Virus record (IMG/VR): IMGVR_UViG_3300027996_002186
Span: 1-64,000 of that record
Reading direction: 5' to 3' (one strand)
DNA length: 64,000 nucleotides
Shown: piece after piece, positions 4,616 to 37,781 of the stretch
How positions within the stretch are numbered: the first letter of the stretch is position 1
How the letters are laid out: each line of letters starts with the position of its first letter
Program-made: the position numbers and the translations under genes
Notes under the pieces: generated by a model
The model's database searches: none
Seen by the model: the letters and a program-made list of their open reading frames with translations, nothing else
What the model was told of the DNA's origin: nothing

Positions 4616-4633
4616 AAATAATATATAGAAAGT

Positions 4634-4930
4634 ATGAAATACTTAAAGACATTTGAAAATTATGGAATAGTAGAATCTGTTTCTTTCAATAGAAAGGATA
4701 AGGCTAGAATACTAACATTAAATGATAGAGCTACTGATGAGGATCACTTAATTAGACTAGCTGTTAATATGGCGAACGCTATTGGTAGAAATGTTGAAAA
4801 AGGAAGTGAGAACGAATATATCTCTGGTAAGAAAGCCTTTCAAAGAGGATTAGCAGCAGAAGATGAGAACTTCCACGAGGTAGCTCAGATATTTTTTGAT
4901 AGAGCAAAAGAATTGGGATTCGAAGAATAA
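4634..4930 (+). CDS. N-terminal-motif hypothetical protein
   Basis: MKYLKTFENYGIVES; TAATATATA at 4619-4627. Confidence 0.8.
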   Translation: MKYLKTFENYGIVESVSFNRKDKARILTLNDRATDEDHLIRLAVNMANAIGRNVEKGSENEYISGKKAFQRGLAAEDENFHEVAQIFFDRAKELGFEE

Positions 4931-6316
4931 TCATATAAATCTATACTTTTGAGAATTATAATTTTTCTCGAATTGTTCTTGTGATAATTCCACACCCCCA
5001 TGAATTGTCATTCCTAAAGTCTTTCCATTTAGAAAGTTTCCGACAGCAGACCTATCACACCCAATATTGAATCCATTTGTAACGCTACTAGTCAATGTAG
5101 TTATAGTTATAGTATCTTCTAATACACCATTAATGTATAATTTAGCGTTTCCATTTTCAACCGCTGAACATCCTATGTGATACCACGTATTTATTACAGG
5201 CGTAGTTGTAGCCGTCAAATTATCATTCACCGAAGCGTTTATTACAGTCGCTCTTAGTAAGTTTGGATTACCCGCATTAATCCTGATTAAAAAGTTTCTA
5301 TTGTTAGCATTATCATTATATTCAGACCGATACTCGCCTAAAAATGCGTTTATATAGATCCATTGCTCAAAACTAAAGGTAGATCCTATATCAGCAACAG
5401 GTAGAATCGGAAAACTTACATATTCGTCCGTGCCATCCATATCCAAAACCCCATCGGTTATGGTTAAACCATTTCGAAGCTCTCCTATCATTGTTGGATC
5501 TACTATATTCTTTATCAGATTACTTCCCCACTTATTAGTAAGTTGATTCGACTTCGTAATTATTTGACTTGACGTGTACACACCTTCTGCTACGAACATT
5601 TCCCCGTAAAATATATTGCCTGATCCCGTTAATGTCGATTGACCGTGACCTAAATAAGTAGCGCCTAAAGTCGCTAAAATAGCAGTTGCAGATGCGTTTA
5701 TTGGTTTAGTTCCATAAGACACACCATCAACAAATAATTCCATTAACTTATTTGATATTGATATTTTCAATGCGTAAATGTGTAAACTATCTATACTTTG
5801 GTCGGGTATTGTCCAAGTCGAAACTTCTTGCGTAGCCGTTCCTTGCCATTTATTAACACTCCTAAAAGTTGTTGATGTCGTGTGATTAATTGTTATTCCG
5901 TTAACTAATGGATTGATTGAAGTTGGCATTGAAAATATATTTCCATTGCTATAATCGAATGTGGAATACATTATAAGTAACTCCAAAATACCATCTGCAC
6001 TATATGAAGATGTTTGCACACCATTAGATGAGGTAACATCGTACCCGACACTTAAATTTCGATTGCTATAGTTCTCGTAAAATATAAACTCTTCGCCTAC
6101 TGCCGAGGTTCCCGTATAGCCATTTCCACTTTGGTCGGGAACTACCAATATATTATCGAGATTATTTAATCCCGTTATCTTAGAAAAATCCCAATGGAGT
6201 TTAATATTTGAATCAACTACATCTGGATAATTGGTTACCACAGATAGTTTATTACCCGTATCAGATTGAAACGTTCCTGAACTTGTTATTGCTGATTTAA
6301 ATCCTCCTGTGCTCAT
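4931..6316 (-). CDS. LamG/concanavalin-like virion fibre protein (two lectin-like domains)
   Basis: DGTDEYV, SFEQWIY, WYHI....KLYINGVL; C-term NYNSQKYRFI. Confidence 0.8.
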   Translation of the reverse strand: MSTGGFKSAITSSGTFQSDTGNKLSVVTNYPDVVDSNIKLHWDFSKITGLNNLDNILVVPDQSGNGYTGTSAVGEEFIFYENYSNRNLSVGYDVTSSNGVQTSSYSADGILELLIMYSTFDYSNGNIFSMPTSINPLVNGITINHTTSTTFRSVNKWQGTATQEVSTWTIPDQSIDSLHIYALKISISNKLMELFVDGVSYGTKPINASATAILATLGATYLGHGQSTLTGSGNIFYGEMFVAEGVYTSSQIITKSNQLTNKWGSNLIKNIVDPTMIGELRNGLTITDGVLDMDGTDEYVSFPILPVADIGSTFSFEQWIYINAFLGEYRSEYNDNANNRNFLIRINAGNPNLLRATVINASVNDNLTATTTPVINTWYHIGCSAVENGNAKLYINGVLEDTITITTLTSSVTNGFNIGCDRSAVGNFLNGKTLGMTIHGGVELSQEQFEKNYNSQKYRFI

Positions 6317-8839: not shown

Positions 8840-9535
8840 TTACTTACAGTGATAACAATTCTTACCAAAATTTTCACACCATTGGTCTATTGTGCAGAAA
8901 GCTTCCATATATTTAATATATCCCCTTAACCCTTGGCATATAAATTTATCCCAGTAATTATACTTTATTGTATAATTCCATAAATCAATTTCACTCCAAT
9001 TATACTTATCTTTTATATACTTAGCCACTTGATATCCAGTTCTATCAGCACCGGCTGTGCAGTGTATAAGAACTTTACCCCTTCTTAAATATGGTTGTAT
9101 AATATCTAAGGATTCAACATAACCACTATCTTTCTTATAACCCAAATGTGCATTAACCCATACAAACTTTTTACCTAAACTTTCAACCAATTTTCTCTCA
9201 GAGTTAATACCAACACCAGTACCTTCTAACGCATTCATTCTAACTACAACATCTATATCATAATTAGTTATTATTGACTTTAATTGAGATAGTGATGGTT
9301 GGTTTGTTCTAAAAACATTGTTACCACCAGGAACAGTATCAAATTTAGATGGTAGGTTATTTATCCTAATAAATGTGTCCTTTACAACCTCACCCACCTC
9401 ATTGTTATTTTCAACATTTTCAGTTAATTTATAATTACTAATAGAAACACCTTGATTATTTGAATAAATTGATAAAATTATAAAACTTGATATAAGTAAT
9501 AAAGATGATATTAATATAATATTTATTCTTGACAT
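8840..9535 (-). CDS. protein tyrosine/dual-specificity phosphatase with N-terminal signal anchor
   Basis: VLIHCTAGADRTG (HCxxGxxR) motif. ATG is cat at 9533-9535 and stop is tta at 8840, so the gene is on - (ORF track says +). Confidence 0.85.
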   Translation of the reverse strand: MSRINIILISSLLLISSFIILSIYSNNQGVSISNYKLTENVENNNEVGEVVKDTFIRINNLPSKFDTVPGGNNVFRTNQPSLSQLKSIITNYDIDVVVRMNALEGTGVGINSERKLVESLGKKFVWVNAHLGYKKDSGYVESLDIIQPYLRRGKVLIHCTAGADRTGYQVAKYIKDKYNWSEIDLWNYTIKYNYWDKFICQGLRGYIKYMEAFCTIDQWCENFGKNCYHCK

Positions 9536-9623
9536 ATGATATATATCACACTAAAAATATGTATATTGTATTTATAGTTGAAACTATTTAAAATTAGTTA
9601 CATATACAATAAAAATAAAAATT

Positions 9624-9842
9624 ATGAAAGATTACAAAAAATGGACAGAAGACGAAGTAGCTTTAGTTAGAGCTGCAATTAAAAACAATGCAGAGGATAT
9701 GAACTATCTAACCAAAGCACTTAACAGAACAGAGGGTAGTGTATCTTGTAGATTGGGAAGGGAAAGAATGTCAATGGGTTTAGAATCAAACTATACTGGT
9801 GAAACTATTGGTCATGTTAAGACAGAACCTATTTTAATATAA
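9624..9842 (+). CDS. small Myb/SANT-like HTH DNA-binding protein
   Basis: KKWTEDE...L.......LNRTEGSV..R pattern. Confidence 0.55.
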   Translation: MKDYKKWTEDEVALVRAAIKNNAEDMNYLTKALNRTEGSVSCRLGRERMSMGLESNYTGETIGHVKTEPILI

Positions 9843-9871
9843 ACAAATTAAAAAATTATACTATAATTTTA

Positions 9872-9959
9872 GTCGATGAGGTGGTGTGGGTTACGCGATC
9901 CTTAGACGTAAGGATTGGTCTTAAATGGCTAATTAGGGTTCGATTCCCTGACATCGACC
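9872..9959 (+). tRNA. non-canonical tRNA-like element (anticodon not assignable)
   Basis: Acceptor GTCGATG/CATCGAC, T arm TAGGG-TTCGATT-CCCTG, long variable arm; anticodon-position hairpin has a 4- or 8-nt loop; no encoded CCA. Confidence 0.55.
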
Positions 9960-36627: not shown

Positions 36628-37386
36628 TTATTTTAAGTGGGGTAATACTTCTTTTGCGTAGTAATCATCAAACCCTTCAAGTAATCCAGTAATTGGAGTA
36701 CTCTTATCAGTTATAATGATTTCATCAATGAAACCAAAGTCTAAAGCTTCTTGTGAGTTTAACCACTTATCTCTTCTAGCACTTTCTAATACTTCATCAA
36801 AAGATTTACCACTATTCTCAGCTAACATCTTAAATAAGATATAATTATACTTCTCAGATTCCATTTGTGAGATGCGATTATCAGCAACATGTCCTTGTGC
36901 ACCACTCGATACTTGGTGAATCATAACCTTTGAGAAATTCAAAGATGAACGTTTGCCTTTTGTACCAGATGATAATAGAATAGAACCCATAGATGCTGCC
37001 ATACCTGTGTTGATAGTTTCAATATCACAATCGATATATCTCATTACATCAACCATAGATAATCCACTTTTAACTGAACCACCTGGTGAATCAATGTGCA
37101 TCCTAATATCTCTTTTCTCCGCTGCTCCTTCTTCTACGGAATCAAGATACATCAATTGTGCTTGTACAACAGTTGACATATTATCATTCACAACACCAGC
37201 AACCCATAAAATTCTTTCTCTCATTAATCTAGAGAAAATATCCATTTGAGTTACTCTCATTTCTCTTTCTTCAAGTATGTATGGTGTCATACTATTCTCC
37301 ATTTGTTTTTGGTAATAGTGTAAGTTCATAGAAGATAACCCCTCACTCTTTGCGTACTTATTAAAATCTTTCCCGTAATCTATCAT
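36628..37386 (-). CDS. clpP: ATP-dependent Clp protease proteolytic subunit
   Basis: MDIFSRLMRERI, IDSPGGSV, GMAASMG (catalytic Ser), VMIHQ, RDKWL. Confidence 0.97.
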   Translation of the reverse strand: MIDYGKDFNKYAKSEGLSSMNLHYYQKQMENSMTPYILEEREMRVTQMDIFSRLMRERILWVAGVVNDNMSTVVQAQLMYLDSVEEGAAEKRDIRMHIDSPGGSVKSGLSMVDVMRYIDCDIETINTGMAASMGSILLSSGTKGKRSSLNFSKVMIHQVSSGAQGHVADNRISQMESEKYNYILFKMLAENSGKSFDEVLESARRDKWLNSQEALDFGFIDEIIITDKSTPITGLLEGFDDYYAKEVLPHLK

Positions 37387-37472
37387 ATTTCTTAATTTAG
37401 TTATTAATCATATAAAGAATAATCAAAAAAGTTTAATTGTTATTTAATTACTTTATCCTTATATTTGTGATT

Positions 37473-37781
37473 GTGAAAAAGAGTTTAATACTTAAAGGTA
37501 AGAGTGAAATCGATAATTTGTTTACAACTGGGTATCCAGTTTCAAGTGATTTTGTATTTGCTAAAGTTTTATCTTCTGATTCAACTAAATTCCTATTCGC
37601 TGTTTCATCTAAGAAATTTAGAAGAGCAGTTGATAGAAATAGAATAAAAAGGTTGATGAGAGAAGTTACTCGTAAAATAGATATAAGTGGTGTTAAAATT
37701 GCTTTTATCTACACCGGAAAATATTTACCGACATACTCAGAAGTAGAATTATCCATCAAATCAATAATCGGTAAAATATGA
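37473..37781 (+). CDS. rnpA: ribonuclease P protein component
   Basis: LK.K.EI..LF..G; FAVSSKKFRRAVDRNRIKRLMRE (RNR motif); GTG start 5 nt after TATATTTG (37460-37467). Confidence 0.9.
   Translation: MKKSLILKGKSEIDNLFTTGYPVSSDFVFAKVLSSDSTKFLFAVSSKKFRRAVDRNRIKRLMREVTRKIDISGVKIAFIYTGKYLPTYSEVELSIKSIIGKI

What the first reader, a model, noticed from the sequence alone, without database searches (positions are those of the whole stretch)
9872..9959. Non-canonical tRNA-like RNA with 13-bp acceptor/T branch and no standard anticodon loop
Seen: GTCGATG/CATCGAC acceptor and a canonical GGTTCGATTCC T-loop. An extra A gives a 7+6 or 8+5 branch. There is a 5-bp D-like stem with a 4-nt loop, an ATCCTTA-GACG-TAAGGAT hairpin at the anticodon position and a long variable arm (TGGTC-TTAAAT-GGCTA). 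Known: 8/5 branches with long D stems and variable arms typify tRNA-Sec-like RNAs, but there is no UCA here. Inference: a tRNA mimic or decoy (e.g. for anticodon nucleases or synthetases), a frameshift-suppressor-type tRNA with an 8-nt loop, or a decayed tRNA. The phage also encodes RnpA.
Basis: partly seen in the sequence, partly recalled or inferred. Interest (0 to 1): 0.62.

Follow-up and report, generated by a model that had tools for sequence, protein, structure and literature searches.

The report
Anticodon-less tRNA mimic in jumbo phage
A marine 483-kb phage carries a conserved small gene, with its own promoter-like sequence, for an RNA that has a tRNA's ends and elbow but a closed hairpin in place of the anticodon, so it most likely acts as a non-decoding tRNA look-alike whose partner is still unknown.

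Summary
Window 9872-9959 (+) encodes an 88-nt tRNA-shaped RNA. It has a 7-bp acceptor stem, a GG-containing D region, a canonical T arm and a long variable arm. At the anticodon position it has a 7-9-bp hairpin capped by GACG.

ARAGORN and Rfam gathering thresholds miss it. The best permissive hit is tRNA-Sec at 25 bits, against a threshold of 47.

Four sequence variants from related marine phage contigs keep the fold. Changes on both sides preserve pairing in the acceptor, T and variable stems. The D region and the hairpin never change. A conserved promoter-like block travels with the RNA into three different gene neighbourhoods.

The "13-bp branch" is not conserved. Homologs show 7 bp, one bulged A, then 5 bp, so this is not tRNA-Sec-like 8/5. 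No homolog has a 7-nt anticodon loop, and the discriminator base varies (C or A).

I read it as a functional, non-decoding tRNA mimic that uses tRNA maturation and displays an invariant hairpin. A decoy or ligand role is inferred, not shown. The few RNA contigs available do not cover it, so expression is untested.

The same C-UUA-GACG-UAA-G hairpin tip recurs on unrelated tRNA-like scaffolds in other metagenomic contigs, some in tRNA arrays and none shown to be viral. This hints at a wider, undescribed class.

The parts
9840..9867 (+). Promoter-like block. It has TAAACA (9840-9845), a 16-nt spacer and TATAAT (9862-9867), with an overlapping TATACT at 9857-9862. G1 of the RNA lies 4-9 nt downstream, so the transcript would have almost no 5' leader.
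   Evidence: Consensus scan, 10 of 12 matches. The block stays conserved next to the RNA in L037 and in L012/L034, where the gene sits at a different site (alignment A4). Function as a promoter is inferred.
9872..9878 (+). Acceptor stem, 5' strand (GUCGAUG).
   Evidence: It pairs with 9952-9958. Pair 1:72 is G-C, G.U or A-U across the variants, and pair 5:68 is A-U or G.U.
9879..9896 (+). Linker plus D region, invariant except 9895 (G/A). There are two possible registers: GUGGU-GUGG-GUUAC (9881-9894), or GUGUG-GGU-UACRC (9884-9896). Both contain the GG needed for the tRNA elbow. A8 and U14 could replace the usual U8-A14 contact.
   Evidence: There is no covariation apart from the one-sided 14:24 change. 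The tertiary contacts are inferred from general tRNA knowledge.
9898..9915 (+). Hairpin H1 at the anticodon-arm position: AUCCUUA-GACG-UAAGGAU. It can extend to 9 bp with C9896-G9917 and G9897.U9916. The inner 6 bp and the loop are invariant. The outermost pair varies (A-U, G.U, A x C).
9916..9931 (+). Long variable arm UGGUC-UUAAAU-GGCUA. Loop length varies among homologs (6, 7 or 18 nt).
   Evidence: The closing pair changes from C-G to U-A on both sides. Twelve extra nt are present in L012, L034 and L077.
9934..9950 (+). T arm: a 5-bp stem (UAGGG/CCCUG) and the canonical loop UUCGAUU.
   Evidence: The fourth pair is A-U, G.U or U.G, with changes on both sides.
9951..9951 (+). Conserved unpaired A between the T stem and the acceptor 3' strand.
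   Evidence: Present in all four variants. Its possible partner at 9933 is U only in the window and G elsewhere.
9952..9959 (+). Acceptor 3' strand (CAUCGAC) plus the discriminator, which is C here and in L037 and A in L012, L034 and L077. CCA is not encoded.

Best explanation
The element is a real, separately transcribed gene for a class-II-shaped tRNA mimic that cannot decode.

Shown:
- It has a closed acceptor stem, a canonical T arm, a GG-bearing D region and a length-variable extra arm. Covariation supports the acceptor, T and variable stems.
- The anticodon arm is replaced by an invariant 7-9-bp hairpin with a GACG tetraloop.
- A promoter-like block moves with the gene.

Inferred:
- The RNA folds into a tRNA L-shape.
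- It is trimmed at its 3' end and given CCA. The phage itself encodes a CCA-adding-family enzyme and RnpA.
- The closed hairpin and the bulged A at the acceptor/T junction keep it out of the ribosomal decoding site.
- It works as a stable tRNA-bodied carrier of the invariant D-region and hairpin surface. That would make it a decoy or ligand for a tRNA-binding factor of the host or the phage. That factor would read the tRNA body, the elbow or the hairpin rather than an anticodon or an amino-acid identity set.
For: - Detection: a single-sequence covariance model finds full-length homologs at 79-87 bits in related contigs.
- Structure: 96.7% of pair cells are paired, against 33-47% when slid. Three pairs change on both sides, in the acceptor, variable and T stems. 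An independent RNAalifold run gives the same cloverleaf with the A unpaired.
- Uneven constraint: none of the differences between the window and L012 fall in two blocks (9877-9894 and 9899-9919, 39 nt together). All of them, about 10, fall in the other 49 nt.
- Conservation: the element is 91-92% identical between variants, against 85-88% for the flanking genes and 68-81% for intergenic DNA.
- Mobility: the promoter-like block stays attached in three different gene contexts.
- Identity: the discriminator varies (C or A) and pair 1:72 varies, so a fixed aminoacylation identity is unlikely.
- Phage tRNA toolkit: RnpA, a CCA-adding-family enzyme and a T4 RnlA-family ligase.
- Recurrence: the same 12-nt tip C-UUA-GACG-UAA-G sits on extended but different lower stems. 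It occurs in unrelated tRNA-like scaffolds L032 and L035, and in L036, where only the 3' part looks tRNA-like. It is absent from 596 Gb of cellular genomes.
Against: - There is no expression evidence. The only RNA-library contig on the stretch covers 9570-9740, not the element.
- Only four distinct variants exist, all from one narrow clade.
- More distant relatives of the neighbouring genes lack the RNA within the flanks fetched. One 83%-identical relative (L078) also lacks it locally.
- No partner protein or complementary RNA was found.
- The D arm and hairpin show no covariation, so their structure rests on thermodynamics and invariance.
- The recurrence of the hairpin tip was found with a pattern that demanded the tip. 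Conservation of the tip itself is therefore partly built into the search.
Confidence: 0.5

Rival explanations
1. It is the precursor of a decoding class II tRNA. Taken above a 5-bp stem (9896-9900 with 9913-9917), the 12 nt CUUAGACGUAAG equal 7+5. Removing 5 nt could leave CUUAGAC or CUUAGAG (anticodon UAG, Leu), CUUAAAG (UAA, Leu), CUGUAAG (GUA, Tyr) or CUUUAAG (UUA, ochre suppressor). The extra 5 nt would mask the anticodon until a phage enzyme pair, a nuclease plus the RnlA-type ligase, processes it.
For: - The long variable arm fits Leu or Tyr class II tRNAs.
- With this register, exactly one nucleotide separates the D stem from the anticodon stem.
- The phage encodes a T4 RnlA-family RNA ligase.
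- ARAGORN with introns allowed and a lowered threshold forces a 3-nt 'intron' model.
Against: - To my knowledge, no mechanism for removing 3-5 nt from a bacterial or phage tRNA loop is known.
- There is no bulge-helix-bulge motif, because the hairpin is fully paired.
- The discriminator is C in two variants and A in the others, whereas bacterial Leu and Tyr identity rests on A73 (general knowledge).
- The conserved bulged A at the acceptor/T junction is unusual for an elongator tRNA.
- The ARAGORN intron calls are arbitrary and differ between settings.
Confidence: 0.1
2. It is a decaying pseudo-tRNA with no function, kept only because the phages compared are close relatives.
For: - The distribution is narrow and only four variants are known.
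- It is absent from L078 and from more distant relatives within the flanks fetched.
- Its identity is only a few points above that of the coding flanks.
Against: - Three stems show changes on both sides that preserve pairing.
- Substitutions avoid the D region and hairpin completely.
- The promoter-like block is retained through two rearrangements.
- The element is unchanged in a brine-metagenome strain that has 13 differences per kb around it. Only about one change would be expected in 88 nt, so this point is weak.
Confidence: 0.12
3. It is an aminoacylated tRNA-like donor or regulator used outside the ribosome. It would be charged by a synthetase that ignores the anticodon, and would feed a transferase or titrate a synthetase.
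For: - SerRS and bacterial LeuRS do not read the anticodon (general knowledge).
- The acceptor end and elbow are intact.
- The bulged A could weaken EF-Tu binding (inference).
- The phage encodes a truncated HisRS-like protein, and the window variant has C73.
Against: - The discriminator and first base pair vary between close variants.
- There is no G-1.
- No aminoacyl-tRNA-dependent transferase was seen near the gene.
- The HisRS-like gene is 271 kb away.
Confidence: 0.08
4. It is a cis-acting tRNA-like element. It could be an RNase P or RNase Z processing signal that defines the ends of neighbouring mRNAs (mascRNA-style), or an attachment or recombination site.
For: - It lies 29 nt after the stop codon of ORF 9624-9842 in the window and in L037.
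- It lies 13 nt before the start of a 101-aa ORF in L012.
- No terminator follows it.
Against: - It has its own conserved promoter-like block.
- Its neighbours differ in the three contexts.
- Both halves of the tRNA shape are present, rather than the 3' fragment typical of att sites.
- Cellular genomes contain no tRNA-like gene carrying the hairpin-plus-T-loop pattern. The 12-mer pattern found nothing and the 10-mer version found only tmRNA-like or chance matches. This does not test for a host tRNA that shares only the 3' half, as att sites usually do.
- The mascRNA model scores 15 bits against a threshold of 42.5.
Confidence: 0.08

Closest known systems
Class II tRNAs and tRNA-Sec (Rfam RF00005, RF01852)
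   Same: It shares a 7-bp acceptor stem, a canonical T arm, GG in the D region and a long stem-loop variable arm. tRNA-Sec is the best Rfam hit.
   Different: It has no 7-nt anticodon loop and no anticodon. It has a conserved bulged A between the T and acceptor stems. The 13-bp branch is not conserved, there is no UCA, and the score is far below threshold (25 against 47).
Allo-tRNAs and 'irregular' tRNA-like genes from metagenomes (Mukai et al. 2017, as reviewed in PMC7609411)
   Same: Both are non-canonical cloverleaves found in bacteria and phages, often with long variable arms. Some carry extra loops or bulged nucleotides, some cannot be charged in E. coli, and some are suspected of non-translational roles.
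   Different: Allo-tRNAs are defined by an 8/4 or 9/3 branch and still carry a 7-nt anticodon loop. This RNA is 7 bp, a bulge, then 5 bp, and has no anticodon loop.
Non-decoding tRNA mimics: mascRNA, the bacterial Y-RNA (YrlA) tRNA-like domain, and the tmRNA tRNA-like domain (my own knowledge; only the mascRNA model was scored here)
   Same: All keep the acceptor/T-arm elbow of a tRNA, use tRNA-processing enzymes and do not decode.
   Different: This RNA is a complete five-helix cloverleaf closed by its own 5' and 3' ends. It lacks the G3.U70 pair of tmRNA and has no Ro-binding stem. The mascRNA model scores 15 bits (threshold 42.5).
Phage tRNA-array paralogs with one scaffold and variable middles, seen here in IMG/VR contigs L046, L047, L051, L052 and L056
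   Same: These are tRNA-like genes (RF00005, 36-42 bits) without a standard anticodon loop. They carry a hairpin capped UUA-GACG-UAA whose lower stem covaries.
   Different: They use a different scaffold (AGUCAGG...CCUGACUA, derived from tRNA-Leu). Their hairpin occupies the D-arm position and probably derives from the Leu D arm (GGUAGACGC). They sit in large tRNA arrays, whereas the window's gene stands alone.
Engineered 'tRNA scaffold' RNAs, in which the anticodon arm is replaced by a cargo hairpin (my own knowledge; not tested)
   Same: The architecture is the same: an intact acceptor, D and T framework with a foreign hairpin in place of the anticodon stem-loop. This design is known to give stable, correctly processed RNA in bacteria.
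   Different: Those are man-made. Here the design is natural, and the role of the cargo is unknown.

Membership tests
Canonical elongator tRNA (RF00005 / ARAGORN) | A 7-bp acceptor stem closed by the 5' and 3' ends, plus a T arm with a GTTCRANYC-type loop. | tested here: met
   There is covariation in both stems.
Canonical elongator tRNA (RF00005 / ARAGORN) | A 5-bp anticodon stem with a 7-nt loop (Y32-U33-NNN-R37-N38). | tested here: not met
   All variants have a 7-9-bp hairpin with a GACG tetraloop. ARAGORN finds nothing. No other arm has a conserved 7-nt loop.
Canonical elongator tRNA (RF00005 / ARAGORN) | An uninterrupted 12-bp acceptor/T coaxial stack. | tested here: not met
   A conserved unpaired A at 9951 interrupts it.
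Canonical elongator tRNA (RF00005 / ARAGORN) | A score above the curated threshold. | tested here: not met
   There is no hit at gathering thresholds. In the tRNA clan, the best permissive score is 25 bits.
tRNA-Sec (RF01852) | A 13-bp acceptor/T branch (8/5 in bacteria). | tested here: not met
   The pair that would make 13 (9933:9951) is kept in 1 of 4 variants.
tRNA-Sec (RF01852) | A UCA anticodon in a 7-nt loop. | tested here: not met
   One search shows no UCA and no 7-nt loop.
tRNA-Sec (RF01852) | A 6-bp D stem with a 4-nt loop. | tested here: inconclusive
   Two 5-bp registers are possible, with a 4-nt or a 3-nt loop. The sequence is invariant, so nothing decides between them.
tRNA-Sec (RF01852) | A long variable arm. 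| tested here: met
tRNA-Sec (RF01852) | The Rfam gathering score of 47 bits. | tested here: not met
   The score is 25 bits.
Allo-tRNA | An 8/4 or 9/3 acceptor/T branch with a normal anticodon loop. | tested here: not met
   The branch is 7 bp, a bulged A, then 5 bp, and there is no anticodon loop. The definition is taken from PMC7609411.
tmRNA tRNA-like domain | A G3.U70 pair, no D stem, and acceptor halves separated by a long mRNA-like and pseudoknot body. | tested here: not met
   Position 3:70 is C-G. The whole RNA is 88 nt. ARAGORN tmRNA search and Rfam find nothing.
Non-decoding tRNA mimic or decoy (functional class) | tRNA elbow and acceptor elements are kept, and decoding capacity is absent. 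| tested here: met
   Sequence and covariation support this.
Non-decoding tRNA mimic or decoy (functional class) | It is expressed as a discrete stable RNA and has a defined binding partner. | not testable with these tools
   The RNA-library contigs do not cover the element. No partner was identified.

The most novel reading that the evidence does not exclude
The element may belong to an undescribed class of natural 'tRNA-scaffold' RNAs carried by phages. In these, a tRNA framework is processed and stabilised by the tRNA machinery. In place of the anticodon it displays a conserved hairpin tip, C-UUA-GACG-UAA-G. The tip would be a specific ligand or decoy for a host or phage factor, for example in the conflict over tRNA-targeting defences. 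That would explain why the same tip sits on unrelated scaffolds (window clade, L032, L035, L036, and the IMG/VR tRNA-Leu-derived family).
Probability: 0.2. Interest if true: 0.75.

Novelty: new variant of a known kind. Interest (0 to 1): 0.55.

Why it matters
Phage tRNA genes are currently explained by codon supply or by escape from host nucleases that cut anticodon loops. A conserved phage tRNA look-alike with no anticodon fits neither explanation. It points instead to tRNA-shaped RNAs that act as ligands, decoys or carriers.

If the recurring GACG-capped hairpin proves to be a functional module, it would define a natural counterpart of the engineered tRNA scaffold. It would also give a handle (pull-down with an 18-nt hairpin) for finding a new phage-host interaction.

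There is a practical point too. Standard tRNA finders miss these genes, so the RNA repertoire of huge phages is under-counted. This genome has three canonical tRNAs and at least three non-canonical tRNA-like genes.

Tried and rejected
1. Rfam and ARAGORN found no family membership.
2. INPHARED phages: no DNA homolog of the element region was found. The only nearby hit (window 4629-4936) is to LR745206, whose whole record has no homolog of the RNA.
3. IMG/VR searches by neighbour protein, by protein alignment and by exact motifs returned only the same phage. The other hits to the 16-nt hairpin are chance matches inside coding DNA.
4. Cellular genomes: the 12-mer plus T-loop pattern gave 0 hits. 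The 10-mer version gave only tmRNA-like or chance matches. A relaxed T-loop scan of IMG/VR added one probable tmRNA 3' fragment.
5. Expression: one RNA-library contig covers 9570-9740 but not the element, and two other RNA runs gave nothing. This counts as no data, not as evidence of absence.
6. I asked whether the neighbouring 231-aa Cys-phosphatase is an RNA 5'-phosphatase acting on this leaderless transcript. Its P-loop resembles those of baculovirus and capping-enzyme RNA phosphatases only locally. The protein has an N-terminal hydrophobic anchor. Its best fold matches are PFA-DSP/Siw14, DUF442 and the periplasmic TpbA. More distant homolog loci carry no such RNA, and L037 has the RNA without this gene. 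I rejected the idea as unsupported.
7. I looked for base-pairing between the hairpin and the GOLLD RNA, the two GOLLD-flanking tRNA-likes or the phage tRNAs. None is better than shuffled controls. The genome has no second copy of, or complement to, TTAGACGTAA.
8. Alternative parses also failed. The variable arm cannot be the real anticodon arm, because its loop is 6, 7 or 18 nt in different variants. A tRNA-Leu-like D-arm reading of GCG-AUCCUUAGA-CGU leaves no partner strand for an anticodon stem.
9. 'Family A' in IMG/VR (L043 and relatives) was dropped as an analog. The Rfam tRNA model places its UUAGACGUAA in the variable region of a tRNA with a CUUCUAC loop.
10. PHROGs and NCBIfam gave no function for the immediate neighbours in any of the three contexts.

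Full report
**What is there**

The window is the first 64 kb of a 483,262-bp phage genome with 29.6% G+C. The phage is found in seawater and brine metagenomes from at least 16 studies.

Numbering the RNA from 9872 = 1, it has these parts:
- a 7-bp acceptor stem (1-7 with 81-87);
- a G-rich D region;
- a fully paired hairpin AUCCUUA-GACG-UAAGGAU (27-44, called H1 below);
- a second hairpin UGGUC-UUAAAU-GGCUA (45-60);
- a T arm with the canonical UUCGAUU loop (63-79);
- an extra A (80);
- a discriminator C (88), with no encoded CCA.

ARAGORN finds no tRNA in the window, and Rfam finds nothing at its gathering thresholds. With permissive thresholds the whole element aligns to tRNA-Sec at 25 bits (threshold 47, E = 0.008 for the 401 nt searched). 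It aligns to mascRNA at 15 bits. The MFE is -31.2 kcal/mol, z = -2.8. GGTTCGAWTCC occurs only three times in the genome, each time in a tRNA or tRNA-like gene.

**Homologs**

A covariance model built from the single sequence (R1) found full-length matches in contigs reached through the neighbouring 278-aa protein and through a DNA pattern:
- L012-L015, L034 and L077 are 100 nt long, with a variable arm 12 nt longer.
- L037 is 89 nt long.
- L033, L038 and L039 are identical copies. L039 comes from a second, 492,776-bp assembly.

There are four distinct sequences.
- With the stored structure, 96.7% of pair cells are paired, against 33-47% when the 3' partners are slid by 1-3 columns.
- Three pairs change on both sides: acceptor 1:72 (G-C, G.U, A-U), the closing pair of the variable arm (C-G to U-A), and the fourth T-stem pair (A-U, G.U, U.G).
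- An independent RNAalifold run on a MAFFT alignment gives the same cloverleaf.
- With only four related sequences this is supportive evidence, not a statistical proof.

**Corrections to the anatomy**

- The pair that would give a '7+6 = 13-bp branch' (U62:A80) exists only in the window's variant. The other three have G opposite A. The conserved form is 7 bp, one unpaired A, then 5 bp.
- RNAalifold prefers a D stem shifted by three positions (13-17 with 21-25, loop GGU). In that register the only variable D-region position (24, G or A) keeps pairing with U14. I cannot decide between the two D-arm registers.
- H1 can extend to 9 bp through C25-G46 and G26.U45. Read that way, a canonical 5-bp anticodon stem carries 12 nt, CUUAGACGUAAG, which pair with themselves.

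**Constraint is uneven**

- Between the window and L012, about 10 substitutions fall in the acceptor, variable and T stems and in the linkers. None falls in positions 6-23 or 28-48.
- The element is 91-92% identical between variants. The flanking genes are 85-88% identical and intergenic DNA 68-81%.
- The discriminator is C in two variants and A in the others.

I take this to mean that the D region and H1 are read for their sequence, while the acceptor end is not held to one aminoacylation identity. This is an inference.

**An independent gene cassette**

A promoter-like block, TAAACA-16 nt-TATAAT (9840-9867), lies 4 nt before G1. It is conserved in L037 and in L012/L034, while the DNA beyond it and downstream of the RNA is unrelated.

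The cassette occurs in three gene contexts:
- in the window: phosphatase(-), ORF72(+), RNA(+), 278-aa gene(-);
- in L012, L034 and L077: 87-aa gene, phosphatase, RNA, then a 101-aa ORF starting 13 nt downstream;
- in L037: ORF72, RNA, then a 350-aa ORF.

L078, an 83%-identical relative of the 278-aa gene, lacks the RNA locally. So do relatives at 44-66% identity, within the flanks fetched. No terminator follows the RNA. Its 3' end would therefore depend on tRNA-type trimming and CCA addition.

The phage encodes several tRNA-related proteins:
- RnpA (window 37437-37781);
- a CCA-adding/PcnB-family enzyme (genome 398540-399742);
- a T4 RnlA-family RNA ligase (genome 358129-359394);
- a truncated HisRS-like protein (genome 280785-281420).

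It has only three canonical tRNAs: Cys, Met and Gln.

**Expression**

Of the runs that hold this stretch, only one is an RNA library. Its single contig covers 9570-9740, not the element. Two other metatranscriptomes gave nothing. Contigs cannot show small RNAs, so this is no evidence either way.

**What it most likely is**

The RNA keeps everything a tRNA needs for its L-shape and for recognition of its ends. It has a closed acceptor stem, a canonical T loop, GG in the D region and an A8/U14 pair that could replace U8-A14. It lacks everything needed for decoding.

I therefore read it as a functional, non-decoding tRNA mimic. It would be processed like a tRNA and kept off the ribosome by the closed hairpin and perhaps by the bulged A. 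It would act through the invariant D-region and H1 surface as a decoy or ligand. Only the anatomy, the conservation and the mobility of the cassette are shown. The processing, the L-shape and the decoy role are inferred. Confidence is about 0.5.

**Rivals**

1. Precursor of a decoding tRNA.
   - The 12 nt equal 7+5. Removing 5 nt could leave a loop for Leu(UAG or UAA), Tyr(GUA) or an ochre suppressor. This suits the long variable arm, and the phage has an RnlA-type ligase.
   - No such splicing is known, there is no bulge-helix-bulge motif, and the discriminator varies (one search shows how arbitrary the intron models are). Confidence is about 0.1.
2. Decaying pseudogene.
   - The narrow distribution fits.
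   - The compensatory changes, the travelling promoter and the uneven constraint argue against it. Confidence is about 0.12.
3. Charged donor or regulator acting off the ribosome.
   - This is possible for synthetases that ignore the anticodon.
   - The identity positions vary. Confidence is about 0.08.
4. Cis-acting processing signal or att site.
   - Its position just after or just before ORFs fits.
   - Its own promoter-like block and its changing neighbours argue against it. Confidence is about 0.08.

**A possible wider class**

The pattern CTTAGACGTAAG, 15-45 nt, GGTTCGANTCC found nothing in 596 Gb of cellular genomes. In metagenome contigs it found three hits outside the phage clade:
- L032 has a 117-nt tRNA-like RNA with a 7-bp acceptor stem and one extra nucleotide after its T stem. 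It sits in tandem with a paralog that has the same acceptor and T arms but a different middle. Each copy follows the same promoter-like repeat.
- L035 carries it as the third gene of a tRNA array. It scores 37.5 bits on the tRNA model, with a 60-nt insertion in the anticodon loop that holds the hairpin.
- L036 looks tRNA-like only in its 3' part.

In all three the 12-mer is the tip of a longer hairpin whose lower stem differs between lineages.

In IMG/VR, a family derived from tRNA-Leu (L046, L047, L050, L051, L052, L056) scores 36-42 bits on the tRNA model and sits in large tRNA arrays. It carries a UUA-GACG-UAA-capped hairpin whose lower stem covaries: AUUGA/UCAAU, AUUGG/CCAAU, AUUAA/UUAAU. 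L051 holds at least seven paralogs with one scaffold and hypervariable middles.

Two cautions apply:
- The searches required the tip, so its conservation is partly built into the result.
- UAGACG is also the normal D-loop and D-stem sequence of tRNA-Leu, so some of the resemblance may come from common descent.

I give about 0.2 to the reading that these form one functional class of natural tRNA-scaffold RNAs.

**Comparison with known kinds**

- It is not a member of tRNA, tRNA-Sec, allo-tRNA, tmRNA or mascRNA (see the membership table).
- In function it most resembles non-decoding tRNA mimics.
- In architecture it most resembles the engineered tRNA scaffold.
- The nearest published company is the 'irregular' tRNA-like genes that Mukai et al. 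found in metagenomes, as reviewed in PMC7609411. Those still have anticodon loops.
- Literature searches found no description of an anticodon-less phage tRNA-like RNA or of the GACG hairpin.

**Verdict**

It is a new variant of a known kind, the tRNA-like mimics. Interest is moderate (0.55). It would rise if the hairpin module proves general or a partner is found.

Noticed in passing
Outside the window: genome 313612-314019 (L003 2113-2520): A GOLLD RNA (RF02032, 278 bits) lies here. It is directly followed by a non-canonical tRNA-like gene (genome 314029-314123; RF00005 43.5 bits, aligned with a 24-nt insertion in the D loop). About 520 nt upstream is a paralogous tRNA-like gene (about 312993-313088). 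Both have a long GUAACC-UUUUCG-GGUUAC arm and no standard anticodon loop. ARAGORN misses both unless introns are allowed.
   Followed up: partly
window 37437-37781 (+) and 36628-37386 (-): The phage encodes an RNase P protein subunit (RnpA; TIGR00188, 48.2 bits, above the cut-off) next to a ClpP-family protease. The same RnpA-ClpP pairing, with a homolog of the Cys-phosphatase beside it, appears in related contigs L061 and L062.
   Followed up: partly
Outside the window: genome 358129-359394, 398540-399742, 280785-281420, 360461-362341, 357063-357599: Other notable genes are a T4 RnlA-family RNA ligase (131.8 bits) and a CCA-adding/PcnB-family nucleotidyltransferase (149-156 bits). There is also a 211-aa truncated HisRS-like protein (TIGR00442, 155 bits, the N-terminal catalytic part plus a second stretch), a full DnaK and an adenylate kinase. 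The genome has only three canonical tRNAs (Cys, Met, Gln).
   Followed up: partly
window 8840-9535 (-): This 231-aa protein has a cysteine-phosphatase fold (P-loop HCTAGADRTGY) and an N-terminal hydrophobic anchor. Its best fold matches are PFA-DSP/Siw14, DUF442 and the periplasmic TpbA. It has about 74 homologs in marine metagenomes, several on contigs of 290-390 kb. It sits beside the RNA in two of the three contexts.
   Followed up: yes
L017 7314-7396 (-): A phage contig whose 278-aa homolog is 55% identical carries a different odd tRNA-like gene (RF00005 26.7 bits, below threshold). It has an 8-bp acceptor stem, a 4-bp T stem and a 9-nt loop C-UUCUAGA-C, which centres on CUA and could be an amber-suppressor anticodon.
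   Followed up: no
L051 270-9933 (-), L056, L046, L047, L052: Phage tRNA arrays contain many paralogs sharing one tRNA-Leu-like scaffold (AGUCAGG...CCUGACUA) with middles of 20-90 nt that differ completely. One copy (L051 7259-7351) has a loop AUUCACG, which would give anticodon UCA.
   Followed up: partly
L032 reverse strand, about 19-147 and 193-309: Two tandem tRNA-like RNAs have identical acceptor and T arms but different inserts. Each follows the same repeat, AAACTTTTTGAGCATATCAAAAAGG, and ordinary tRNAs lie next to them.
   Followed up: partly
window 4629-4936: This is the only stretch of the first 20 kb with a nucleotide match in the phage collection. It is 82.8% identical to a 634,780-bp uncultured phage (LR745206.1) and covers the 98-aa ORF 4634-4930, which has no PHROG match.
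   Followed up: no
window 9624-9842 (+): This 72-aa ORF lies just upstream of the RNA in the window and in L037. By eye it resembles a Myb/SANT-like helix-turn-helix (W..EE...L motif). It has no PHROG or NCBIfam hit. A 171-nt contig from an RNA library covers its 5' part.
   Followed up: no
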